A stretch of DNA of 63,899 nucleotides, filler included, from Octopus bimaculoides (Eukaryota), in NCBI RefSeq assembly GCF_001194135.2. It is 5 parts of 4 records of this genome, joined end to end, with 100 filler letters (N's around TTAATTAATTAA, not from the genome) between each part and the next. Parts side by side here need not be neighbours in the genome. Positions count along the whole stretch, not along the records: positions 1 to 13,330 come from NC_068991.1; 4 more parts are not named here. One strand, 5' to 3'. Positions 1 to 13,430 of this stretch are shown here, one piece after another. Made by a program: the position numbers and the translations under genes. The notes below the pieces were generated by a model, which had not been told where the DNA came from, did not search any database, and saw only the letters and a list, made by a program, of their open reading frames with translations. Position 1 is the first letter of the stretch. Each line of letters begins with the position of its first letter.

Positions 1-98
1 TCATCATCATCATCATCATTATCATCATCATCATTATCATCATCATGGTCGTCGTCCTCATCATCATTATTATTGTTATCATCATCATCATCATCATT

Positions 99-148
<50 letters not shown>

Positions 149-248
149 AATCATCATCATCATGCTTATCGCCATGCTCGTCATCATCATTATCATTATC
201 ATCATCATCGTCGTCGTCTTCATCATCATCATTATCGTCATCGTCATT

Positions 249-279
<31 letters not shown>

Positions 280-296
280 ACCTCATTATCATCATC
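1..296. repeat. (ATC)n microsatellite
   Basis: Seen directly. Confidence 0.98.
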
Positions 297-870
297 AAAA
301 TCACATTAAAAGAACTAACAGCAGCAAACCGTTTTCGTTAGTTGAGGGGAGGGGGTTGTTCGTTTTTGTTTTTGTTTAGTTTTTTTTTACATATTGCATT
401 TTTAAACTATAGCAGATGTAGCCAATTCCTTTTTGTTTTCTTTTTAAATTTGTTTTTCTTTTTCTTATTGTATGTATGGCATTTATTTTATAGCTTTTCT
501 CCTCTTCCTCCATACAAAAGTATATAGACACTCCTTAGATATAAAACACAAGGGCGAACTAAGGAGAGAAAACCTCAATACGATCTATCGACCTCAGCCT
601 ACTAGAAATAGCACTCATACCTCCCTCATATCTGACATTACCACCTTAAAATGGGAAGGAGATATGAGCATGCAATGTAACGTATCCATAAGGCTTGTGC
701 CAAAATTTGAAACTGTTATTGCATTGTACCACTATTTGTTCCGCTGCCACAACTGACTCTTAATATTGATTTCAAATTTTGGCTCAAGGCCAGCAATTTC
801 AGGGAAAGGGTTAAGCCAATTGTAATCCAGCTCACCACCTTACTACCGGCTCTTAATATTAAGCTGGCAT

Positions 871-1545
871 AAGGCGGCGTGATGGCAGAATTGTTAGCAC
901 GCCGGGTAAAACGCTTAAGCGATATTTCGTCCGTCTTCACGTTCTGAGTTCAAATTCTACCGAGGTTGACTTTGCCTTTCATCCTTTCAATGTCGATAAA
1001 ATAAATACCTATTGAATACTGGGGCTCGATGTAATTGACCTACCCAAGGCGGCAGGTTGGCAGAAACGTTAGCACGCCGGGCGAAATGCTTAGCGGTATT
1101 TCGTCCGTCTTTACGTTCTGAGTTCAAATTCCGTCGAGGTCGACTTTGCCTTTCATCCTTTCGGGGTCGATTAAATAAGTACCAGTTACGTACTGGAGTC
1201 GAAAAAATCGACTTAATCCGTTTTCTGTCCTTGTTTGTCCCCTCTGTGTGTAGCCCCTTGTGGGCAGTAAAGAAATAAGACCTACTCCCTCTCCCAAGAT
1301 CGCTGAGCTGATGTCAAAATTTCCATAATCATAAGGCGGTGAGCTAGCAGAATCGTTAATATATCGGACAAAATGCCAAGCGGTATTTCATCTGGCTTTA
1401 CGTTCAGAGTTCAAATACCGCCGAAGTCGACTTTGCTTCTCATTCTTTCGAGGTCGATAAAATAAGTACTAATCGAGCACTAGAATCGAACTAATCAACT
1501 GCTCCCCATACGCACAATTTCAGGCCTTGTACCTATAGTACAAGG
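871..1545 (+). mobile_element. SINE family A cluster (tRNA-derived): older copy 871-1045 interrupted by young copy 1046-1280, third copy 1333-1545
   Basis: A-box GGCAGAA.GTTAG, B-box GAGTTCAAAT, central GCCTTTCATCCTTTCGGGGTCGAT. Confidence 0.85.
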
Positions 1546-2294
1546 GAGAACATGTATACGGCAACTACAATCCGAGATACCTTTCATAAAACAAGATTGA
1601 GGAGGGTGATCAAAGTTTAAACGCCTGCAGCATAACAGCAACATCAACATGAATAACGACGAGGAAGAGGAAATTCTAAAGAAGAGAGGGATGATATTGT
1701 TGAAACGTTAACATATCGTGCAGCCCTATAAAAGAATCATGTTGCGTTATGAATGTAATTATGTAAATCGGACATTCCTTCACACTGACGTCTCTCTAAA
1801 GACAAAGTGACTAATAGGTTGCTGAATAATTGAACACACACATACACACACACATACACATCTATATGCACTCACACACACGTATGTGTTCAAGTTATTA
1901 GAAATACAAATTATGCACACATGCAAGTATACACATGTACGATTATACATAAATACATATACATGCATACGTACATGCATGCATATATGCATATGTATGG
2001 ACGTATATATGCGCGCGCGCGTGGTGGTGGTGGGGTAAAAGAGTGAAGGAGAGGAAGAGAGAGAGAGAGAGATTGTATACAAAGCTCTGACCGACTTTTA
2101 GCATTTATATAAAGTACAAACTTGATATTTAATGCTGCAAATTTAATCATCTATACGATTTCCTTCATTTTCTATCACTTCTCTCCATCTATCTGTAATT
2201 TTTTGAATGCCTGATTTCAAAAATTCCTTGTGTTTGAATTAAAATACGTATTCAATTCACTTTTTTTATATCTCCCTTGCTGGCCATGCTTTTC

Positions 2295-2367
2295 TCGTCA
2301 AAATAGTTTTGCAAAGATCTAAAGATCTAAATGAGCGGAAGTTTAATGGCGGAAGGTCTGGAGAATG
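2295..2367 (-). mobile_element. Mariner transposase fragment
   Basis: HSPDLPPLNFRSFRSL resembles the SPDLAPSDF(H)LFRSL motif; runs into an N gap. Confidence 0.55.
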
Positions 2368-2921
2368 NNNNNNNNNNNNNNNNNNNNNNNNNNNNNNNNN
2401 NNNNNNNNNNNNNNNNNNNNNNNNNNNNNNNNNNNNNNNNNNNNNNNNNNNNNNNNNNNNNNNNNNNNNNNNNNNNNNNNNNNNNNNNNNNNNNNNNNNN
2501 NNNNNNNNNNNNNNNNNNNNNNNNNNNNNNNNNNNNNNNNNNNNNNNNNNNNNNNNNNNNNNNNNNNNNNNNNNNNNNNNNNNNNNNNNNNNNNNNNNNN
2601 NNNNNNNNNNNNNNNNNNNNNNNNNNNNNNNNNNNNNNNNNNNNNNNNNNNNNNNNNNNNNNNNNNNNNNNNNNNNNNNNNNNNNNNNNNNNNNNNNNNN
2701 NNNNNTAATAAGCCCAGTCCTTATTCTAAAGATCATCGACCCTCTAGAATACCCTCGCACAGCATGCATTCCCAGTTACCCTCTACACACAGCTGTACAA
2801 GAAGGACGTTAACCTCGTCGACCTAAACGTTCTCCGATGTCTGGATATAGCTCATTCTTCTACACAATCCTCACACAATATTTTATGGGATAGACTGGAA
2901 TCTTTTCCCCGTAGAAATTAT

Positions 2922-3158
2922 AAGGTGGTGAGCTGGCAGAAACGTTAGCACGCCGGGCGAAATACTTAGCGGTATTTCGTCTGCTGTTACGTTCTGAGTT
3001 AAAATTCCGCCGAGGTTAAGTTTGCCTTTCATCCTTTCGGGGTCGATGAATTAAGTACCAGTTACGCACTGGGGTCGATGTAATTTACTTAATCCTTTTG
3101 TTTGTCCTTGTTTGTCCCTTCTATGTTTAGCCCCTTGTGGGCAATAAAGAAATAAGAA
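2922..3158 (+). mobile_element. SINE family A, full length
   Basis: Same head, centre and CCCCTTGTGGGCAATAAAGAAATA tail as 1046-1280. Confidence 0.9.
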
Positions 3159-3407
3159 GCTATAGCGCTCATCTGCTTTATGTCACGAAAGAGCCAGCAA
3201 AAAAACTAACAGTAATGGGAACCAAACCAGTACACGTGCACTCATTACAAGTTTTCTATGACGTCTGGAGTGTAACAGATCATCTTACAATTAAAGCTAT
3301 CATGTAAAGTACATTAACTCTACCAAGTGCATAGCTTGCTCTACAACAAGAGATTGCACAACAATGTCTATGTATGTGGGTGCGTCGAATTCGTACGACT
3401 GTATGTG

Positions 3408-3448
<41 letters not shown>

Positions 3449-3959
3449 ACGCACACATGCATAAACATACATGTGCGCGCGCATGTGTTTCTATGAAGTT
3501 GTGATTTTGTGCGTGCGTGTAGGAAAAGATGTTTGTGGTGCGAAAATACTATTGACGGGTAATTGCACGTGAGTGTGTTTGTGTGTGGTATGAGAATGTC
3601 TGCTTATGTACGTGTACACACACACACACACACACACACAACTGGGGAAAAAAGAGCGAGGAGGCAGAGGTTCGTATAAGAATCAAATATCTTTTCTGTG
3701 TATTTCTCAGACATATTTCTCTTTATTACCATTTTTACGATGGAATTCAAGAAATTCTTAATACTTTGTATAATATTCCATATCTCGTATGCATTTATTT
3801 TAACGTATTCACCAACGTATACATAAATACAAACATACATACATAAATGCCTACGTACGAACATGCATACGCGCATTCGCACACACGAACGCACACACAC
3901 ATACACGCGCGCGCGCGCGCGCACAGACAAGCAGACAGGCAGGCAGACATATTCTTCTC

Positions 3960-4320
3960 TCAGCGGCCACAACCGAGATGTGTTTCGCCACGCCGCACCA
4001 GAAATTTGTTAGCTTTTTCAGTTCAATTTCATGCTGCGTGTTTCTGCCAATAACCTGAATGTAGTTGAGAGTTCTTCTTCCGCTATTAGGGTGCGGAAGT
4101 CTCCAAGAAGTAACATCTGATATGGTTTGATGTTCAGCACGATAGCAGTGGCCAACAAAGCCCACCATCCGTTGGTAACAATAGTAGAGATGAGTGGAAT
4201 GTGTAAATAAATCTTCTGTTTGGCCTTGGGCACTCGCCACGAGATGTTGTCAGTCCTCATGAGAAGCTTGGCATACAAGCCATCAAAACAAATCTCGAAG
4301 CTTCCTCTTCATAGTGTAAG
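3960..4320 (-). mobile_element. RTE-clade LINE, 3' fragment
   Basis: Frameshifted YAKLLMRTDNISW...IPLISTIV / FVGHCYRAEHQTISD..WRLPHPNSGRRTLNYI, typical of the RTE ORF C-terminus. Confidence 0.7.
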
Positions 4321-5897
4321 ATTTTATTTTCATACTAAAGAATGCTCTCTACAAGTGCCTTGCTCTTTTACTCTTTTACTTATTTCAGTCATTTTGACTG
4401 CGACCATGCTGGAGCACCGCCTTTAGTCGAGCANNNNNNNNNNNNNNNNNNNNNNNNNNNNNNNNNNNNNNNNNNNNNNNNNNNNNNNNNNNNNNNNNNN
4501 NNNNNNNNNNNNNNNNNNNNNNNNNNNNNNNNNNNNNNNNNNNNNNNNNNNNNNNNNNNNNNNNNNNNNNNNNNNNNNNNNNNNNNNNNNNNNNNNNNNN
4601 NNNNNNNNNNNNNNNNNNNNNNNNNNNNNNNNNNNNNNNNNNNNNNNNNNNNNNNNNNNNNNNNNNNNNNNNNNNNNNNNNNNNNNNNNNNNNNNNNNNN
4701 NNNNNNNNNNNNNNNNNNNNNNNNNNNNNNNNNNNNNNNNNNNNNNNNNNNNNNNNNNNNNNNNNNNNNNNNNNNNNNNNNNNNNNNNNNNNNNNNNNNN
4801 NNNNNNNNNNNNNNNNNNNNNNNNNNNNNNNNNNNNNNNNNNNNNNNNNNNNNNNNNNNNNNNNNNNNNNNNNNNNNNNNNNNNNNNNNNNNNNNNNNNN
4901 NNNNNNNNNNNNNNNNNNNNNNNNNNNNNNNNNNNNNNNNNNNNNNNNNNNNNNNNNNNNNNNNNNNNNNNNNNNNNNNNNNNNNNNNNNNNNNNNNNNN
5001 NNNNNNNNNNNNNNNNNNNNNNNNNNNNNNNNNNNNNNNNNNNNNNNNNNNNNNNNNNNNNNNNNNNNNNNNNNNNNNNNNNNNNNNNNNNNNNNNNNNN
5101 NNNNNNNNNNNNNNNNNNNNNNNNNNNNNNNNNNNNNNNNNNNNNNNNNNNNNNNNNNNNNNNNNNNNNNNNNNNNNNNNNNNNNNNNNNNNNNNNNNNN
5201 NNNNNNNNNNNNNNNNNNNNNNNNNNNNNNNNNNNNNNNNNNNNNNNNNNNNNNNNNNNNNNNNNNNNNNNNNNNNNNNNNNNNNNNNNNNNNNNNNNNN
5301 NNNNNNNNNNNNNNNNNNNNNNNNNNNNNNNNNNNNNNNNNNNNNNNNNNNNNNNTATATACACACACACGTACATGAACTCATCATCACTGTTGTGACA
5401 ATTATATACACTACATACATCATTCAGGCCTCGTCGCAAACGCGAGCTAGTCGGTTGATATTTAGCATTGATAAGAATGTTCAAACTCTGACGAACAAAA
5501 CCAACGAGTAGCGGCATACTTCTGTCACCCAACACCGATTTGATTGAACTAATAACGAAAAGAAGAGTGTTAGTTACGTTAAACTTCCGTTTCATCTGCT
5601 TCTGTCTTAACTCCGGTTTATATTATGTTATCGATGTTGCGCTAGACAATTGAATGCGTGAATAACATTTGTATTTCTGAATCTGAGAAGCTGGGGCTAA
5701 TTACACCGTAGTGGTTTACCGCTGTATATACTTCATCCTGTCCTACAAAAGATTGAATAATAAACTAATGAATTGTTTGTTACTAATGCATTGCTCCAGT
5801 CAAATCATTTAGCAAATTTTACTTACCCCCCCCCCCGTGATACATATTTATAAATATAATGTGCTGGTGTATCTCAGACAACATGGTTATAGTATAG

Positions 5898-6265
5898 TTG
5901 TTGTTGGTACTCCGTCGCTTACGACGTCGAGGGTTCCAGTTGATCCGATCAACGGAACAGCCTGCTCGTGAAGTTAACGTGCAAGTGGCTGAGCACTCCA
6001 CAGACACGTGTACCCTTAACGTAGTTCTCGGGGATATTCAGCGTGGCACAGTGTGACAAGGCTGACCCTTTGAATTACAGGCACAACAGAAACAGGAAGT
6101 AAGAGTAAGAGAAAGTTGTGGTGGAAGAGTACAGCAGGGTTCGCCACCATCCCCTGCCGGAGCCTCGTGGAGCTTTAGGTGTTTTCGCTCAATAAACACT
6201 CACAACGCCCGGTCTGGGAATCGAAACCGCGATCCTATGACCGCGAGTCCGCTGCCCTAACCACT
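5898..6265 (-). mobile_element. SINE family C (tRNA head, (CAA)n tail), young
   Basis: High identity to 17414-17806; B-box GGTTTCGATTCCC on the minus strand. Confidence 0.92.
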
Positions 6266-6565
6266 CCGTCGATTGCGACGACGGCAGTTCCAGTTGGTTC
6301 AATCAACGCAACAGCCTGCTCCTGAAATTAACGCAGAAGTGACTGAGCACTCCACAAACACGCGAACCCCTAACGCAGTTCTCGTGTTCAAGGTGACGCA
6401 TTGAATGTCACAAAGCTGGTCTATTGAACGACATGCACAACTCATTTTTATCAGCTGCGTGAACTAAAGCGTCTTGCTCAAGGACACAATGCGTCGCCTT
6501 GTATTGAACTCACGACCTTACAATTGTGAACCGAAGGCCCTAACCACTAAGCCACGCGACTTCAC
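6262..6565 (-). mobile_element. Older CORE-bearing SINE sharing the family C 3' tail
   Basis: GTGTCCTTGAGCAAGAC CORE-like motif on the minus strand; 3' part aligns with 5910-6030. Confidence 0.7.
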
Positions 6566-7737
6566 TTACAACGACAGCTGCAATGTATATAGGTCACTAA
6601 CAAAATCTGCCATGTCATAAAAACAAAATCCGATTTTCTGATATTTTTAAAATGTTGAGATTAATGCTATTATAAAAATATAAGTGGTGATTATTTTCGA
6701 AGATTTTAAAGTTTTATCTCATTTCTTTTGTGTATGCTGTTGAATTTTCTTTCTTCCTATTTTATCATTATCATCCTCATCATCATCATCATTATTATTG
6801 TTATTATTATTATTATTATTATTATACAAAATATACACTAATTAAGCTAAAGTAATTTGTCTGAGGTATCCAGCCAAAATAAATATGTCATTATCATTCA
6901 AAACCAACAATTAAAAAGCATTCTGTGTATTTCTACCACGATTTAAAAGTAAGACAAAGAAGTAGACCAGAAAATAATTACTGATTTTCTGTTGCATGAA
7001 CGAAATGCTAACGATACACATTTGCGACAATTAAAGATACATTATGCAGATTGTTTTCCAAACTTCTGCTCGAAAAAAGTTACTTCTAAAGAAGAGACTA
7101 GATCCCATGCTTTGAAGTTATATATAAAATCCTTGTATAAATACATAATAATAACAGTTCGACTCAGGTCCTCATTATTTAAAGTTTTGTGAATGTAGGA
7201 CACGTCCGCCTCATCAGACGTTCGGTCAGGATAAAGCCTCCCCCTCTCTCTCCCCGAGCATCTGATGAGATTACACACGTGTTTTTTCTACAGAACTTTG
7301 AGAAATTTGTATTTTTATTAAATTCTTGTAACTCCAACTAAATGTGTTGATACTACTTTCTTCCGTTGGTTCACTCCCTCGTATGTATATATGTGTGTGC
7401 GTGCCTGTGTGTGTGTGAGTGTGGCTTAGTTCATGAGACAATATGCACATAGGATATAAATATGGGACGAACCTCGGGAGCAGGAAATAAGTGTTGAACA
7501 TGAAAAGACTGAAAAGTAGCCTCAATTTGTCATTGAAACTACTTCACATTCTTCTATTTTCTTCGTGATTGCATCTGGGAGAGCACGAATGTTGCAAACG
7601 GGGATATTGTGAATACATAAAAGAAAACTTATAAATAGGCATCAACACCTGCACATATAAAACACTTACACACACACATGATAATAATAATAATAATAAT
7701 AATGATAATAATAATAATATCAGCATATCACTTAAAC

Positions 7738-7930
7738 AGAGCGACGAGCTGGCAGGTTCATTAGCACGCCGGACGAAATGCTTGGCGGCCTTTCGTCCGT
7801 CTTTACGTTCTGAATTCAAATTCCGCCGAGGTCGCTTTTGCCTGTCATTCTTTTGAGGTCAGTAAAATAAGTACCAGTCGACTCACCTACTCCCCAGAAA
7901 TTTCTGGCCTTGTGCTAAAATTTGAAATCG
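7738..7930 (+). mobile_element. SINE family A
   Basis: Homologous to 871-1045. Confidence 0.85.
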
Positions 7931-8081
7931 ATATTATTTAATATTATTATAAGCTTATTGATTTCTAACTACTGGTTATTAGTACTGATTTGTTTTAAAC
8001 ATTGTTTTAAGGCAAGACAATGCAAGTTATATAAAAAAAAATTAATAGTACAGAACGATGGTTACTACTATTCTTTTCTAC

Positions 8082-8293
8082 TCTAGGCACAAGGCCCGAA
8101 ATTTTGGAGGAGGGGGGGGCAGTCGATTACAACAACCGCAGTACGCAACTGGTACTTAATTTATCGACCCCGAAAGGATGAAAGGCAAAGTCGACCTCGG
8201 CGGAATTTGAACTCAGAACGTAACGACAGACGAAATACCGCTAAGCATTTCGCCCGGCGTGCTAACGTTTCTGCCAACCTAACGTTTCTGCCA
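8082..8293 (-). mobile_element. SINE family A
   Basis: Reverse-complement copy with a duplicated 5' end (CTAACGTTTCTGCCA twice). Confidence 0.85.
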
Positions 8294-8998
8294 TATGTAT
8301 GTATGTATGTTTGTATGTATGTATGTATGTATGTCTTCGGTGTTAATTCCACAAAGTCTGCATCGGTTGTTACATTTCACTGCTTTCCCTGCATCTCTGT
8401 CCCTTTTGTGCATCAGGTGAATGTCTGTCTGTCTGTCTGTATGTATGTATGTATGTAACAAACGAAGGATGGAGGTACTGATTTCACATTCATTCCAAAG
8501 TTCCAGCTGTTTCGACAACAGATGGGTAATAAATCAGTTAAGACATTGGAAAACATGAACATCAACAATAACTTTGATTATATAATATTGATTATATAAG
8601 GAAAATCCATAGTAATTTCATCGTGACCTCTATGATTGAACTCTATGAACTCACTGGGAATTTTCATTATTTAATCGATATCATATGATCAATGTCACAT
8701 AATTATTGCTGACATTCATGTTTGTCAACTTGGTAAAAGATTTATTGCCCATGTGCTGCTGAAACAGCTGTAACTAACGAATAAATGTGATACTAGTATC
8801 ACGTTTATTTAATGATAATGAGAGCTGTTTTATGTTGGACGGTTTATGCAAACATGCTCAAGAACCCTGAGAATTTTCTTGATCATAAAGTGTCCTAACT
8901 CCTTCAATTTGAATCTTTCTGGCAGCGGTTCTCAACCTGTGGTCCGCAAAAGTAGTACTGGAGGTCCGTGAACTAAATTCAAAATTCCATATACATAC

Positions 8999-9035
<37 letters not shown>

Positions 9036-9180
9036 NNNNNNNNNNNNNNNNNNNNNNNNNNNNNNNNNNNNATATATATAATATGAGGATAAAATCTTTG
9101 TAAGAATTTATCAAGTAGTCAGCGTGAAAATACCTCATAAGGTAAAAAAAAACATCATTTTTTTCCATAAATTATATAAT

Positions 9181-9299
9181 TTAATTTATATATGGGCATT
9201 ACTATACAATAATGCCTCACGCTTAGAGGGTAGTTTTGACTTATAAAGTCCCTCTAAGCGCGAGGCATTATTGTATAGTAATGCCCTTATATAGATTAA
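9181..9299. repeat. Palindromic MITE-like element
   Basis: 50-bp arms (47/50 match) around a 19-nt spacer, in TA-rich flanks. Confidence 0.85.
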
Positions 9300-9494
9300 A
9301 TTTTATATATATATAGTAGTCGCTTCCATAGCTGAATTGAGGCCTTCATTTAGGCTGAGAGCAGTATTATTGAAAAATCTATTTAATATATTTTTATGAA
9401 AATGTATTAGCCTTTCAGCTTAATATTTTTGTTGTTTTTAATACAGTTTTGTTCACACGCACACACATACACATTAATACACGTAGATGTATAC

Positions 9495-9496
<2 letters not shown>

Positions 9497-9562
<66 letters not shown>
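9497..9562. repeat. (GATA)n microsatellite (others at 42408-42470, 52680-52705, 60707-60758)
   Basis: Seen directly. Confidence 0.97.
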
Positions 9563-9564
<2 letters not shown>

Positions 9565-10689
9565 AGGGTGTGTGTGTGTGTGTGTGTGCGTGTGAGTTTT
9601 AAATCAATGTTTTGTTTTATTTATACAGCTTATATATATCTAATGTTTCAAAATGTTTAGGTAAGCGAAAAGATACCCGTTTAAGTCATGTAATAGTTAT
9701 GGACTGAAGAACATTGATATGTATTGGATAACTAAGAAATGAAACACATTCGACTCTATTTTCAACTGCTGTGAGTGACATTAGTTTTCCATTTCTCTTT
9801 TACGACGTGAGAACAATTACGATAGAAATACTGACAAGATAAAAAGAAAAGACGAGACGCTGGTGATGCTAAAATAAACATTTGGCTAGATTTGTGTGTC
9901 TCTTCTGATACTTAATCGCTCTTGGGGTGGTTTAAGTTGATAGCATTTCATTGCAAAAAAAAATTCCATAATCCTCAAATATCTGTAGCCAAGCTGAAAT
10001 ATTTCTAACTTCCAGACTGACGGCGAGAGAGAATATGCTAATGGATTTCTTTCTATAGTCAAGTCCTAAAGCAGAATTTAAAGATATTGCTACACTTTCA
10101 GACAATTTAAATGATGTCAAACTAGAAATCAGAAGGAATTAATTACATTCTTTATCGTTTCAATTTTAAGTTCTGTCAACAGATCGAATTTCCTTCTATT
10201 ACTATATTTCAGCTTTGAATTAAGGTCTAACAAAACAGACGAGCGTTTCTAGGAACGGAGCATTGACCAGGTAAAGTACCGGTCAATTACTGGTGGTCAG
10301 TAGTTTTGACTAACCCTCTCTACTCAAAATTGTGACTAAATCAGAAACCATTATCATTATTGGTGATTTGTTCCTCTCCACTTCCTCTTTAGCAAGTCAA
10401 CACATCTAGCAACTGTAATCAGTTTTCGCAAATACGATAAGCTATAGCTAGTTGTAGGTATAGGGGAATTGCTTTGTTTGGATGTTCTGCCTTAAGAATT
10501 TTACTTTTACATGCCAGACATGTTTGACATCTTGGCAGATATCTACCGCCACTGGTAGCAGACCGAGAAGATACTTATTCTGTGATTTGAGGTGTGACCG
10601 ATCACCGAGCAAAGGGAATCACATTGATCATTTTCAGCTCGTAAATCTACGGTTTAACAAGATTTTGACCAACGTCAAAGCAGTATGTT

Positions 10690-11260
10690 CTTGTCGCCGC
10701 TAGTCTGATTGGTGATGCGTAAATATACGCAAAGCGCGCAGAGCAACGAAACCGTTCTGCACACACGCATTCAGTGTTCGAGTGAAGTTATGTCGCGCAC
10801 TTACTGTTACGCGTGTGGCGGATCCAACTAACAGCTGAGTCCACTATGAAAATTGTTCCGCCGCCTTCCTTTAGCCAGTAAGCAGGTTGTCTTTATCTGT
10901 CTGGTGGCTTTGGTGAAAAGAAGTTGTGTGGTAGATGAGATTGACAGAGCTGAAGACAGACACTTCATTTTTGGGCCAAGCCTTCATCAACTTCTTTAAG
11001 TTTCACTTGAAAAGGAAAATGAAGGCGGAGAGTGAAGTGTTGCCTTCCGGCAAATTTTTCGCGAGGTGGATGAGTGGTGAGTATGATTTAGAGTCGACGG
11101 GCGTGTTGTGAACATACGCCTGTGGATCGAAGGGCAACTGGAAGAAGTCAGGATGAACATGGTTTCGTGGGTCTGCCGCCTTTGAGGAGTTTTTCTTTTA
11201 ATTTTTTCCCCCTTTTTTACACACTTTTTGTGTAATCCCACGCAATATCGCTCTGTACCG
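10690..11260 (+). promoter_or_regulatory. Candidate promoter / 5' UTR exon region of the sGC gene
   Basis: Non-repetitive and locally CpG-rich against a CpG-poor background. Has a reverse CCAAT (ATTGG) near 10709, a candidate donor TG|GTGAGT at 11077, and a long (CT) tract at about 11360-11517. Inference only. Confidence 0.35.
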
Positions 11261-11880
11261 CCTTCTGTCATTTAGTCAACTTTGTGGTTTATAAAAAATG
11301 GTGTTGTCATCATCATTATTACTATCACATCCTTGTAAAGTGTCTTTGGATCTGCAGTTCTTTCTTTTTCTTTCTCTCTCTCTTTCTCTCTCCCCTCTCT
11401 GTTTCTCTCTCCCTCTCTCTTTCTCTGTCCTTCTCTCACTATTTTTATCTCTCTTTTCTCTTTCTCTCTTTCACTCTGTGTCTCTCTACCTCCTTCCCCC
11501 CCCCTCTCTCTCTCTTAAGAATTTTGACGAAAGCAGTGCTATGGCGCTTGACTTCAGGAAATCTTATGCTCAAGTTCACCCAGTGCACTCATTTTCCACT
11601 CCTACCCATCTCATATTCTTACTATGATTCGCACCTATCCCAGACCCACTCAAAAAGAACTTTACCCAATAATTCTTCCACAGGCCTTTAAATACAAACT
11701 GAACATCAACTCAACTGATTCATCGCTCTGTGAAGGCCTATAAAAGTTGTAGGTATTTCCGTAACTTCTCTGATTAACTACTAGAAACTATGTGTATTGT
11801 ATATAAAAATGTTTTAAAGCTTTGTAATGGTCACTAACATATCGTTTTCTTTTTTCTTTCATGGTACTTTCCTCACCATC

Positions 11881-11988
11881 ATGAACATTGACGATGACAA
11901 TACCAACATTATGAACAACGTCATCAACATTAACAACAACCGGAAATTGATACCAACTCACAAAAAAATATTACATTGTTATAACTAG
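11881..11988 (+). other. Possible 35-aa upstream ORF ending 13 nt before the sGC ATG
   Basis: ATG at 11881 (A at -3) runs to TAG at 11986-11988, out of frame with the main ATG. Relevant only if this stretch is in the mRNA. Confidence 0.25.
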
Positions 11989-12001
11989 CCGTAAAGACAA
12001 A

Positions 12002-12781
12002 ATGTATGGCATAATTATCCAAGCCATCGTCATCTATCTTCAGGAGACGTATGGAGAAGAGACATGGGAAGCGATTCGTCAACGGGCAGGCATTGAAGAA
12101 CACAGCTTCAGCTTACATGAGAGATATAAGGAAGATACTATCGTTCGAATTTGTGATGCTGCCAGTAAACTAATCGGTGTCGATCGGAGTACCATTATGA
12201 ACTCATTCGGTGATTCTTTCGTTGCCTACGTGAGCAAATACAACTATGACCGCATCTTAAAAGTACTGGGGCGAAACCTCCGAGATTTTCTCAACGGGCT
12301 TGATAACCTTCACGAATATCTGCGCTTCTCCTACCAAAATATAGTACCGCCCTCTTTCTTCTGCGAAAATGAGCATAGAATGGGTCTGCACCTTCACTAC
12401 CGTAGCTCGCGGAGAGGTTTTGTGCATTATGTAATCGGACAAATTAAAGCCGTCGGTAAAACCTTCTACAACACTGACATTGATATTAGGATCATAAAAC
12501 ATGATGAATCAGCTGACTCGTCGCATGTCATATTTGATCTGAGGTTTGAAAACGAGGGATTTAATACTCAAGTTGACAATAAGGTGGATGACAAAGACCA
12601 ATTCAAAGTTCCAGCTTATTTTTTTCGCAATCTTTTTCCATTCCATATTCAATTCAAAAAGAATATGGATATTGTAAGCGCTGGCTCGGGACTTCGAGCA
12701 ATTATACCAAATATAATGAACAAAAACCTTCTGGATGTTTTTGTTCTTCGGAAACCGGTTTTCCAGTTTAATTGGAAAAAT
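12002..12781 (+). CDS. Gyc88E: Atypical soluble guanylate cyclase, first coding exon (H-NOX domain plus start of PAS/HNOBA), 260 aa
   Basis: Starts MYG; contains DFLNGLDNLHEYLRFSY (His104), PSFFCE, HYRSSRRGFVHYVIGQI (YxSxR, Tyr143) and FPFH. The frame ends at codon AAT (12779-12781) followed by a GTAAGT donor (phase 0); the ORF-track extension to 12838 is intron read-through. The symbol names the closest recognised family (Drosophila Gyc88E-like), not a verified orthologue. Confidence 0.93.
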
Positions 12782-13430
12782 GTAAGTGTATGTTTTAATA
12801 ATTATTTTCATATACTTATTTGCTTTCACTCGTCGTAGTCATTGTATAATTAACCATTCAAGTAGTTGAGCTGTATATTAATCCAGCAATAATTTGTATA
12901 TCGCTTATTTGGTCACAAATCAGCGAATTCTGTTTCACCTTCAAATAAGCTCCTCAATTATATACAACAAACATTTCACAATGATTTTTTTTTTTTTTTT
13001 TTTGGTCAGATTAGATCTATAAATGAATCCTTGACTGAAAAAAATCTCATCAAAGTCTCCTTAAGTTAGACAGTTCCCATTCCAGGCTTATAATCAGAGG
13101 TCTTACACAAAATGTTCCATTTGAATAGAAGAGGAAAACCTATTCGTTTAGTGAGTTATCAAAGATTTGGTTCGTAAGTTCCTTTCAATTTTATAACTAC
13201 ACATGACTTAATATTCGACTACATTTTGCAGTAGGAAAACCTGTAGAAGTATGAAACAGAAAATATATATGTTTTAGTGAAGAAGAGACGTCTTTGTGTT
13301 CGTATACTTAAACGAGGACTTGAATTTGATNNNNNNNNNNNNNNNNNNNNNNNNNNNNNNNNNNNNNNNNNNNNTTAATTAATTAANNNNNNNNNNNNNN
13401 NNNNNNNNNNNNNNNNNNNNNNNNNNNNNN

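What the first reader, a model, noticed from the sequence alone, without database searches (positions are those of the whole stretch)
12002..12781. O2-sensor-type (atypical) soluble guanylate cyclase with a complete oxygen-binding signature
Seen: proximal His104 (12311-12313), Y133-x-S135-x-R137, Tyr143 (12428-12430) followed by Gln147, and Val77/Arg at the positions of beta1 Cys78/Cys214. Established: a distal-pocket Tyr (Tt H-NOX Tyr140, Drosophila Gyc88E Tyr143) stabilises bound O2, whereas NO-selective sGC beta1 has Ile145 and both Cys. Inference: this is a cephalopod molecular O2 sensor rather than an NO receptor, of interest in a hypoxia-exposed, haemocyanin-based animal.
Basis: partly seen in the sequence, partly recalled or inferred. 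Interest (0 to 1): 0.7.

Follow-up and report, generated by a model that had tools for sequence, protein, structure and literature searches.

The report
First exon of oxygen-type guanylate cyclase
This stretch is the intact first coding exon of a haem-containing "atypical" soluble guanylate cyclase of the well-known Gyc-88E / GCY-31 / beta-3 family, which senses oxygen in flies and worms; it is an unusually diverged but otherwise ordinary new member, and neither its oxygen sensing nor its cephalopod origin could be tested here.

Summary
Window 12002-12781 (+) is one open exon of 260 codons. It starts at the family's conserved Met-Tyr-Gly and ends at a GTAAGT splice donor, at an intron position shared with two molluscan-type homologue loci. 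It encodes a full H-NOX haem domain (Pfam E=1e-51) and the first 59 residues of the HNOBA/PAS domain.

The closest relatives are Gyc-88E / gcy-31-like / Manduca beta3-type cyclases at 41-50% identity. The Gyc-89D type scores 27-36% and NO-sensitive beta1 about 35%. Tyr143 and Gln147 are each present in 119 of 120 relatives, so they mark the clade.

"Complete oxygen-binding signature" is overstated. The Trp9 and Asn74 partners of the bacterial tyrosine are Ile9 and Phe73 here, as in all animal atypical cyclases. The catalytic domain lies outside the piece. The cephalopod origin could not be verified. O2 sensing is inferred from homology only.

Verdict: a new, fast-evolving member of a known kind, of modest interest.

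The parts
12002..12781 (+). First coding exon (260 codons) of an atypical soluble guanylate cyclase subunit of the Gyc-88E/GCY-31/beta3 type
   Evidence: Open frame from the conserved MYG start to a GT donor. Pfam HNOB plus HNOBA. 41-50% identity to named 88E/gcy-31 proteins. It keeps 52 of 54 columns that are at least 90% conserved in the family.
12005..12490 (+). H-NOX (haem NO/O2-binding) domain, residues 2-163 by Pfam; the fold extends to about residue 185
   Evidence: PF07700, 175 bits against a cut-off of 25.5. AlphaFold2 model pLDDT 86.5. Foldseek TM 0.92 to Nostoc H-NOX and 0.81-0.82 to sGC beta1 chains.
12311..12313 (+). His104 codon (CAC): predicted proximal haem ligand
   Evidence: Aligns with beta1 His105 and Tt His102. 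Invariant in 120 of 120 relatives.
12398..12412 (+). Tyr133-Arg-Ser135-Ser-Arg137: the Y-x-S-x-R motif that binds the haem propionates
   Evidence: Aligns with beta1 Y135/S137/R139. Tyr and Arg are invariant; Ser or Thr in all 120 relatives.
12428..12442 (+). Tyr143 (TAT 12428-12430) and Gln147 (CAA 12440-12442), one helical turn apart on the helix spanning residues 141-156: predicted distal-pocket residues
   Evidence: Tyr143 = Tt Tyr140 = beta1 Ile145; Gln147 = Tt Leu144 = beta1 Ile149. Each present in 119 of 120 relatives. Helix 141-156 in the model.
12230..12232 (+). Val77 at the column of beta1 Cys78
   Evidence: This column is Val/Ile/Leu throughout the 88E clade and Cys in the beta1 clade.
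12626..12628 (+). Arg209 at the column of beta1 Cys214, an unusual residue for the clade
   Evidence: The clade has Phe/Leu/Tyr here; Arg was seen in none of the 120 relatives.
12605..12781 (+). Start of the HNOBA (PAS-like) domain, residues 202-260, cut by the intron
   Evidence: PF07701 profile positions 2-62 of 216, E=1.4e-13.
12782..13330 (+). Intron 1, starting with the GTAAGT donor and running off the end of the piece
   Evidence: AAT|gtaagt here, compared with AAT|gtgagt in L001 and AAC|gtaagt in L002, all at the same W-x-N position. No further sGC-like exon anywhere in the piece.

Best explanation
Window 12002-12781 is the intact first coding exon of a gene for an atypical soluble guanylate cyclase subunit of the Gyc-88E / GCY-31 / Manduca beta3 clade.

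Shown:
- The exon encodes a complete H-NOX haem domain. It has the proximal His104, the Y-x-S-x-R propionate clamp and the conserved Pro117.
- A distal-helix Tyr143/Gln147 pair replaces the Ile/Ile of NO-selective beta1.
- The H-NOX domain is followed by the beginning of the PAS-like HNOBA domain.
- The exon ends at a conserved phase-0 intron.

Inferred:
- The downstream exons, outside this piece, encode the rest of the PAS domain, a coiled coil and a class III cyclase domain.
- The ferrous haem binds O2, with Tyr143 (probably helped by Gln147) hydrogen-bonding the bound ligand.
- As in Drosophila Gyc-88E/89D and in C. elegans GCY-31/33, O2 binding lowers cyclase activity. A fall in O2 would then raise cGMP and excite the sensory neurons that express the gene.
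- The subunit would act as a homodimer or with a Gyc-89D-like partner. One such partner gene exists in the cephalopod Argonauta.
For: Domains: Pfam HNOB E=1.3e-51 and HNOBA E=1.4e-13.

Fold: model pLDDT 86.5. Foldseek gives TM 0.81-0.82 to sGC beta1 chains and 0.92 to Nostoc H-NOX.

Residue equivalences.

Relatives:
- The best hits are molluscan, annelid and deuterostome proteins named 88E or gcy-31-like, at 45-50%.
- Identity is 41-48% to Drosophila 88E, Manduca 88E (beta3), Lymnaea, Lingula and fish 88E.
- Identity is 27-33% to the 89Da/Db type and about 35% to beta1.
- In bootstraps the exon falls outside beta1 in 94 of 100 replicates and never joins beta1.
- Every full-length relative listed carries PF00211 Guanylate_cyc.

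Intactness:
- No stop or frameshift.
- 52 of 54 columns at least 90% conserved are retained, which is typical for the family.
- The intron position and donor are conserved, so it is not a retrocopy.

Literature:
- Atypical insect and nematode sGCs lack the two beta1 cysteines and act as O2 sensors (PMC1435932).
- Drosophila atypical sGCs are stimulated without O2 and inhibited by O2 (Morton abstract in PMC2990333).
- GCY-31/33 sense O2 decreases, while GCY-35/36 sense increases (PMC3650002).
- The distal Tyr is the accepted predictor of O2 binding (bioRxiv 10.1101/2022.02.14.480389).
Against: - Only exon 1 is present. The catalytic domain, expression and haem binding are unseen.
- The Tt H-NOX hydrogen-bond partners Trp9 and Asn74 are Ile9 and Phe73.
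- From my own knowledge, not checked here: a distal Tyr alone did not confer O2 binding on full-length beta1 in one study, and purified Gyc-88E also binds NO and CO. The Tyr is therefore neither sufficient nor exclusive.
- Strict placement inside the 88E/GCY-31 subclade has only 48 of 100 NJ bootstrap support, because the branch is long.
- The exon is 7-9 identity points further from outgroups than other molluscan members. It also carries clade-unusual residues (Asn81, Gln112, Arg209, Lys43, Gln217), so its function may have drifted.
- The direction of the O2 response differs between family members: O2 inhibits some and activates others.
Confidence: 0.65

Rival explanations
1. It is a genuine atypical sGC subunit, but its physiological ligand is NO or CO, or it responds to several gases, rather than being a dedicated O2 sensor.
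For: The haem pocket keeps everything needed to bind any diatomic gas: His104, Y-x-S-x-R and Pro117. The Trp/Asn partners of the bacterial O2 triad are absent. The title of Huang et al. 2007, cited in bioRxiv 10.1101/2022.02.14.480389, speaks of 'ligand binding and inhibition' of Gyc-88E. From memory, NO and CO also bind and inhibit that enzyme.
Against: All experimentally studied members of the Tyr-bearing atypical clades respond poorly to NO and are regulated by O2 (PMC1435932, PMC2990333, PMC3650002). Tyr143 and Gln147 are each conserved in 119 of 120 relatives, which argues for selection on a polar distal pocket.
Confidence: 0.15
2. It is a non-functional remnant: an intact-looking first exon of a gene whose remainder is lost, disrupted or not expressed, for example a decaying lineage-specific duplicate.
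For: Only exon 1 can be seen, and 12 kb upstream is repeat-rich with no other gene. The sequence is unusually diverged, with at most 50% identity to anything in about 15 billion proteins. The exact ORF is not on record in the assembly index. No cephalopod 88E-type protein appears among the 120 best relatives of the scallop orthologue.
Against: There is no stop or frameshift in 260 codons within AT-rich DNA (about 3e-4 such runs expected by chance). It keeps 52 of 54 highly conserved columns and 83 of 96 columns at least 70% conserved, within the normal family range. All functional residues, the start codon and the splice donor are preserved. Neutral decay over the time needed to reach 50% divergence would have destroyed these.
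Confidence: 0.1
3. It is a subunit that works mainly as a partner or modulator, forming heterodimers with an 89D-like or conventional subunit. Its own haem would contribute little to gas sensing.
For: The 89Da/Db-like clade exists alongside the 88E clade in arthropods, molluscs and the cephalopod Argonauta. PMC1435932 notes genetic evidence that GCY-35 and GCY-36 act as heterodimers.
Against: PMC1435932 reports that Manduca beta3 and Drosophila Gyc-88E form active homodimers. The haem-binding residues here are fully conserved, which would not be expected for a haem-independent partner.
Confidence: 0.1

Closest known systems
Drosophila Gyc-88E, Manduca MsGC-beta3 and C. elegans GCY-31 (atypical soluble guanylate cyclases, 88E clade)
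   Same: The signature is identical column for column: His104, YRSxR 133-137, Tyr143, Gln147, Val77 and Pro117. Both start with MYG, both run from H-NOX into HNOBA, and both lack the beta1 Cys78 and Cys214. The intron position after W-x-N is shared with molluscan-type loci L001 and L002.
   Different: Identity is only 41-50%, whereas scallop against limpet is 69% and scallop against fly is 57% over the H-NOX core. It has clade-unusual residues Ile4, Lys43, Asn81, Gln112, Asn113, Arg209 and Gln217. The rest of the protein is unseen.
Gyc-89Da/89Db-type atypical sGC, including Argonauta hians GAB1598433.1 (P0179)
   Same: H-NOX with the Tyr143/Gln147 pair and the haem-binding residues. This is the likely heterodimer partner class.
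   Different: Identity is 27-36%. The beta1-Cys78 column is Phe or Cys rather than Val. It forms a separate clade in the tree.
NO-sensitive sGC beta1 (human 6jt0_B, Manduca 6pas_B)
   Same: Same fold and domain order (TM 0.81-0.82). Same proximal His, Y-x-S-x-R and Pro.
   Different: About 35% identity. Beta1 has Ile145/Ile149 and Cys78/Cys214, where this protein has Tyr143/Gln147 and Val77/Arg209. The two separate in 94 of 100 bootstraps.
Thermoanaerobacter (Caldanaerobacter) tengcongensis H-NOX, the structurally defined O2-binding H-NOX (PDB 1u4h/1u55)
   Same: The distal Tyr is at the equivalent helix position (Tt Tyr140 = Tyr143). The fold is the same (TM about 0.8 on the target).
   Different: About 21% identity. 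The Trp9 and Asn74 that orient the Tyr are Ile9 and Phe73 here. Tt Leu144 is Gln147 here. Tt H-NOX is fused to a methyl-accepting chemotaxis protein, not a cyclase.

Membership tests
H-NOX / HNOB domain (Pfam PF07700) | Profile match above the curated threshold | tested here: met
   175.2 bits against a cut-off of 25.5, covering profile positions 1-162 of 163.
H-NOX / HNOB domain (Pfam PF07700) | Proximal His, Y-x-S-x-R propionate motif and the conserved Pro (Tt P115 / beta1 P118) | tested here: met
   His104, Tyr133/Ser135/Arg137 and Pro117. All are aligned to the PDB sequences and invariant in the relatives, apart from Ser/Thr at 135.
H-NOX / HNOB domain (Pfam PF07700) | H-NOX fold | tested here: met
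   AlphaFold2 pLDDT 86.5. Foldseek TM 0.92 to Nostoc H-NOX and E=1e-18 to sGC beta1. This is a prediction, not an experiment.
H-NOX / HNOB domain (Pfam PF07700) | Binds haem b | not testable with these tools
   Needs recombinant protein and spectroscopy.
Atypical sGC, Gyc-88E / GCY-31 / MsGC-beta3 clade | Closer to named 88E/gcy-31/beta3 proteins than to the beta1, alpha or 89D types | tested here: met
   41-50% against 27-36% identity. 277-295 bits to 88E-type hits against 142 bits to beta1 and 40 bits to alpha1.
Atypical sGC, Gyc-88E / GCY-31 / MsGC-beta3 clade | Phylogenetic placement inside the clade | tested here: inconclusive
   NJ bootstraps on 185 H-NOX columns put it outside beta1 in 94 of 100 replicates. 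It sits strictly inside the 88E/GCY-31 subclade, excluding the 89D type, in only 48 of 100, because of a long branch. No ML program was available.
Atypical sGC, Gyc-88E / GCY-31 / MsGC-beta3 clade | Distal-pocket Tyr at the Tt Tyr140 / beta1 Ile145 column | tested here: met
   Tyr143. Present in 119 of 120 relatives.
Atypical sGC, Gyc-88E / GCY-31 / MsGC-beta3 clade | Lacks beta1 Cys78 and Cys214 | tested here: met
   Val77 and Arg209. PMC1435932 states that beta3 lacks these two cysteines.
Atypical sGC, Gyc-88E / GCY-31 / MsGC-beta3 clade | Full architecture: H-NOX, PAS/HNOBA, coiled coil and class III cyclase domain | not testable with these tools
   Only H-NOX and HNOBA positions 2-62 of 216 are in the piece. 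tblastn with ten full-length relatives finds no other exon. The gene runs off the piece at 13330.
Atypical sGC, Gyc-88E / GCY-31 / MsGC-beta3 clade | O2-regulated cGMP synthesis with weak NO response | not testable with these tools
   This is biochemistry. It is known only for Drosophila, Manduca and C. elegans members (PMC1435932, PMC2990333, PMC3650002).
NO-selective sGC beta1 | Non-polar distal pocket (Ile145) with Cys78/Cys214, and grouping with beta1 | tested here: not met
   Tyr143, Val77 and Arg209. About 35% identity, and never sister to beta1 in 200 bootstrap trees.
Tt H-NOX-type O2-binding triad | Tyr140 with its Trp9 and Asn74 hydrogen-bond partners (PMC7356049) | tested here: not met
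   The Tyr is present, but Trp9 is Ile9 and Asn74 is Phe73. The same holds for all animal atypical cyclases examined.
Gyc-89Da/Db-type atypical sGC | Highest similarity to the 89D clade | tested here: not met
   27-33% to named 89Da/Db proteins and to the Argonauta 89D-like protein.

The most novel reading that the evidence does not exclude
The exon may belong to a fast-evolving, lineage-specific (possibly cephalopod-specific) offshoot of the Gyc-88E clade. No orthologue above 50% identity exists in about 15 billion public proteins. Its clade-unusual substitutions (Asn81, Gln112, Arg209, Lys43, Gln217) could reflect a retuned gas affinity or a new partner specificity. One example would be an O2 or other gas sensor adapted to the low-O2-capacity, haemocyanin-based physiology of its host.
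Probability: 0.12. Interest if true: 0.6.

Novelty: new member of a known kind. Interest (0 to 1): 0.3.

Why it matters
Atypical soluble guanylate cyclases are the only well-established direct molecular O2 sensors that drive fast behaviour in invertebrates, through hypoxia escape in fly larvae and aerotaxis in C. elegans.

The full-text library held no paper linking them to octopus. If the host is a cephalopod, this exon gives a concrete candidate for neuronal or peripheral O2 sensing in an animal with demanding oxygen physiology. It also gives a clean construct, residues 1-190, for ligand-binding work.

The family itself, its Tyr signature and its wide distribution across invertebrates, amphioxus and fish are already known and routinely annotated. 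The finding extends a catalogue and does not open a new question.

Tried and rejected
- Exact-sequence look-up of the 278-aa ORF in the assembly index: not on record.
- Finding the host organism. No protein above 50% identity turned up in the word-indexed search or in the exhaustive search of 50%-identity cluster representatives.
- The six-copy SINE-like repeat of the window was compared by BLAST with the Argonauta hians locus L003 and with the two best homologue loci. There was no real match.
- Four repeat k-mers were searched in the full-text library: no paper. The "cephalopod" claim stays unverified.
- Search for further sGC exons in the piece, using ten full-length relatives and tblastn at E up to 10: none. 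The short extension past 12781 (VSVCFNNYFHIL against ILSHTNNLFEL) is read-through of the AT-rich intron, and I judged it to be chance.
- Retrocopy idea: rejected, because the exon stops at the conserved intron position with a canonical donor.
- Pseudogene idea: not supported by the conserved-column test.
- Rfam and tRNA scans of the piece: nothing.
- No other protein-like ORF in 1-12000; the long ORFs there are microsatellite or N-gap artefacts.
- Several primary papers could not be opened in the library (Zimmer 2009, Vermehren-Schmaedick 2010, Morton 2005). Their content is cited only through papers that quote them.
- The bacterial promoter/terminator scan was not used, as it does not suit a eukaryotic locus.

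Full report
**1. What is in the sequence**

The piece (1-13330) is AT-rich (about 38% G+C) and repeat-rich, with three assembly gaps. Its only long, non-repetitive ORF is 12002..12838 on the + strand. From the window's base composition, about 3e-4 stop-free runs of 278 codons are expected by chance in the whole piece.

The frame opens with ATG-TAT-GGC (Met-Tyr-Gly), the conserved N-terminus of sGC-type H-NOX proteins. After codon 260 (AAT, 12779-12781) comes GTAAGT.

In the two genomic loci that encode the best database homologues, the reading frame is interrupted at exactly the same place. After the conserved W-x-N come AAT|gtgagt (L001) and AAC|gtaagt (L002). It is followed by an intron that runs off the piece.

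tblastn with ten full-length relatives found no other sGC-like exon in the piece on either strand.

**2.

Pfam assigns residues 2-163 to HNOB (E=1.3e-51) and residues 202-260 to the first quarter of HNOBA (E=1.4e-13).

The alignments used were human and Manduca sGC beta1 from the PDB and Tt H-NOX. My recalled Tt H-NOX sequence was verified as identical to 1u4h and then aligned. They give these equivalences:

| This exon | sGC beta1 | Tt H-NOX |
|---|---|---|
| His104 | His105 | His102 |
| Tyr133 / Ser135 / Arg137 | Y135 / S137 / R139 | Y131 / S133 / R135 |
| Pro117 | Pro118 | Pro115 |
| Tyr143 | Ile145 | Tyr140 |
| Gln147 | Ile149 | Leu144 |
| Val77 | Cys78 | Phe78 |
| Arg209 | Cys214 | no equivalent |

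An AlphaFold2 model built on 50 relatives is confident (pLDDT 86.5). Its best structural matches are sGC beta1 chains (TM 0.81-0.82) and Nostoc H-NOX (TM 0.92 on the target). Tyr143 and Gln147 lie one turn apart on the helix spanning residues 141-156.

**3. Which family it belongs to**

Two searches were run: a word-indexed search of 5.8 billion protein clusters, and an exhaustive HMMER search of 1.84 billion cluster representatives. Neither gave anything above 50% identity.

The best hits are first-exon-sized ORFs and annotated proteins. They come from gastropods, bivalves, annelids, hemichordates and amphioxus, and are named "soluble guanylate cyclase 88E(-like)" or "gcy-31-like".

Named anchors:
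- P0127 is Drosophila tropicalis Gyc-88E.
- P0488 is Manduca sexta 88E, that is beta3.
- P0136's cluster includes Pristionchus gcy-31.
- P0124 is the scallop gcy-31-like protein.

| Compared with | Identity to the exon |
|---|---|
| Named 88E-clade proteins (fly, Manduca, Lymnaea, Lingula, fish) | 41-48% |
| Best unnamed mollusc-type ORFs | 50% |
| Gyc-89Da/Db-type clade, including Argonauta hians P0179 | 27-33% over the exon (36% over the H-NOX core) |
| sGC beta1 | about 35% |

The second atypical clade was identified as the Gyc-89Da/Db type from the source names.

In NJ trees of the H-NOX core, the beta1 clade is marked by Ile/Ile/Cys at the three diagnostic columns. It is cleanly separate from the Tyr/Gln clades. 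The exon falls outside beta1 in 94 of 100 bootstraps and was never placed with beta1. It sits strictly inside the 88E/GCY-31 subclade in only 48 of 100, because its branch is long. I weight the large gap in similarity more than that bootstrap figure.

**4. Is it a live gene?**

Only exon 1 can be judged, and it shows no decay.
- It keeps 52 of 54 columns that are at least 90% conserved in 112 relatives. The exceptions are Leu4 to Ile and Gly81 to Asn. In the family, 38% of members deviate at least as much.
- It keeps 83 of 96 columns that are at least 70% conserved.
- The start codon, all haem-contact residues and the splice donor are intact.

It does evolve fast. It is 7-9 identity points further from fly, amphioxus and annelid outgroups than the scallop orthologue is. 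Its identity to the limpet is 55%, where scallop against limpet is 69%. It also carries residues that are rare or absent in the clade: Lys43, Asn81, Gln112, Asn113, Arg209 and Gln217.

**5. How strong is the "oxygen signature"?**

Tyr143 and Gln147 are each present in 119 of 120 relatives. Every named 88E and 89D protein checked has them. All beta1-type sequences have Ile or Leu at both columns, plus Cys78. So the pair reliably marks the atypical clades.

The literature treats the distal Tyr as the predictor of O2 binding (bioRxiv 10.1101/2022.02.14.480389, citing Boon and Marletta). The structurally defined network in Tt H-NOX, however, is a Tyr140-Trp9-Asn74 triad (PMC7356049). Here, as in all animal atypical cyclases, those partners are Ile9 and Phe73.

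"Complete oxygen-binding signature" is therefore too strong. The exon has the complete signature of the Gyc-88E clade, not a validated sufficient set for O2 binding.

Gln147 aligns with Tt Leu144. That position was chosen for distal-pocket engineering, as in PDB 3iqb "Tt I75F/L144F H-NOX". A hydrogen-bonding role for Gln147 is plausible, but it is an inference.

**6. Most likely mechanism**

By homology, this is a haem-based O2 sensor subunit.
- Drosophila atypical sGCs are stimulated in the absence of O2 and inhibited by it, and they mediate hypoxia avoidance (Morton and Vermehren abstract in PMC2990333; PMC1435932).
- GCY-31/33 detect O2 decreases, while GCY-35/36 detect increases (PMC3650002, citing Zimmer 2009).

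Because the exon is of the 88E/GCY-31 type, I favour an O2-inhibited cyclase that raises cGMP when O2 falls. It would act as a homodimer or with an 89D-like partner. An 89D-like gene exists in the cephalopod Argonauta (P0179, locus L003).

Shown: domain identity, residues, clade affinity, exon integrity. Inferred: haem and O2 binding, the sign of the response, dimer partners, and the downstream domains.

**7. What could not be established**

The host organism is unverified.
- No close orthologue is in the databases, and the exact ORF is not on record.
- The window's six-copy SINE-like repeat is absent from the Argonauta locus and from the two homologue loci.
- Repeat k-mers were not found in any paper.
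- No cephalopod 88E-type protein appeared among the 120 best relatives of the scallop protein. That fits a fast-evolving cephalopod lineage but does not prove it.

Expression and the catalytic domain are outside the data.

**8. Verdict**

This is a new, diverged member of a well-known and widely annotated family; hundreds of "88E-like" entries appear. It is not a new kind of sensor. Interest is modest. It would rise if the gene proved to be a retuned, lineage-specific paralogue, or if it were shown to underlie O2 sensing in cephalopods. On that subject the full-text library held nothing.

Noticed in passing
window 872-1049, 1046-1280, 1333-1510, 2922-3157, 7738-7915 (+) and 8121-8280 (-): Six copies of a SINE-like interspersed repeat of about 180-240 nt, 61-92% alike. 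ARAGORN and Rfam find nothing in it. It is absent from the Argonauta locus L003 and from L001/L002.
   Followed up: partly
window 5909-6560: The G+C-richest block of the piece holds a second repeat family, with a direct pair at 5909-6030 / 6263-6384 (83%). By eye, there are tRNA-like box motifs on the minus strand around 6470-6560. It is probably another tRNA-derived SINE.
   Followed up: no
window 9173-9230 / 9250-9307: A 58-nt inverted repeat, 93% complementary, with a 19-nt spacer. It looks like a hairpin or MITE.
   Followed up: no
window 1-297, 3400-3447, 9495-9563, 11359-11487: Long microsatellites: (TCA)x99, (TG)x24 and (AGAT)x17. There is also a 130-nt TC-rich polypyrimidine tract about 500 bp upstream of the start codon. 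Several 'long ORFs' in the piece are artefacts of these repeats or of the N gaps.
   Followed up: no
window 2368-2705, 4434-5355, 9036-9071: Three assembly gaps (runs of N) within the 12 kb upstream of the exon. Anything in them is unseen.
   Followed up: no
window 10501-11082: A block richer in CpG (observed/expected 1.25 at 10501-10800), followed by GTGAGT at 11077-11082. It could be a promoter plus a 5' non-coding exon of the cyclase gene. This cannot be tested without RNA data.
   Followed up: no
window 12782-12817: Read-through of the intron gives VSVCFNNYFHIL. tblastn aligns this with the first residues of the next exon in homologues (ILSHTNNLFEL). I judged it a chance match in AT-rich sequence, because the donor and intron position are conserved.
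   Followed up: partly
relatives P0111, P0149, P0162: A few members of the 88E-like group have lost the distal Tyr. Notothenia coriiceps '88E-like' has Phe. Amphioxus P0149 has Met/Leu and P0162 (unnamed, sister to it in the tree) has Leu/Ile at the Tyr/Gln columns. Perch and coelacanth 88E-like proteins keep Tyr/Gln.
   Followed up: no
L003 10001-47938 (Argonauta hians BAAFZT010000004.1): The cephalopod Argonauta has an annotated 629-aa atypical sGC of the Gyc-89D type. It has Tyr/Gln, and Cys at the beta1-Cys78 column. The gene spans 38 kb, with a fibrinogen-domain gene nested on the opposite strand.
   Followed up: partly
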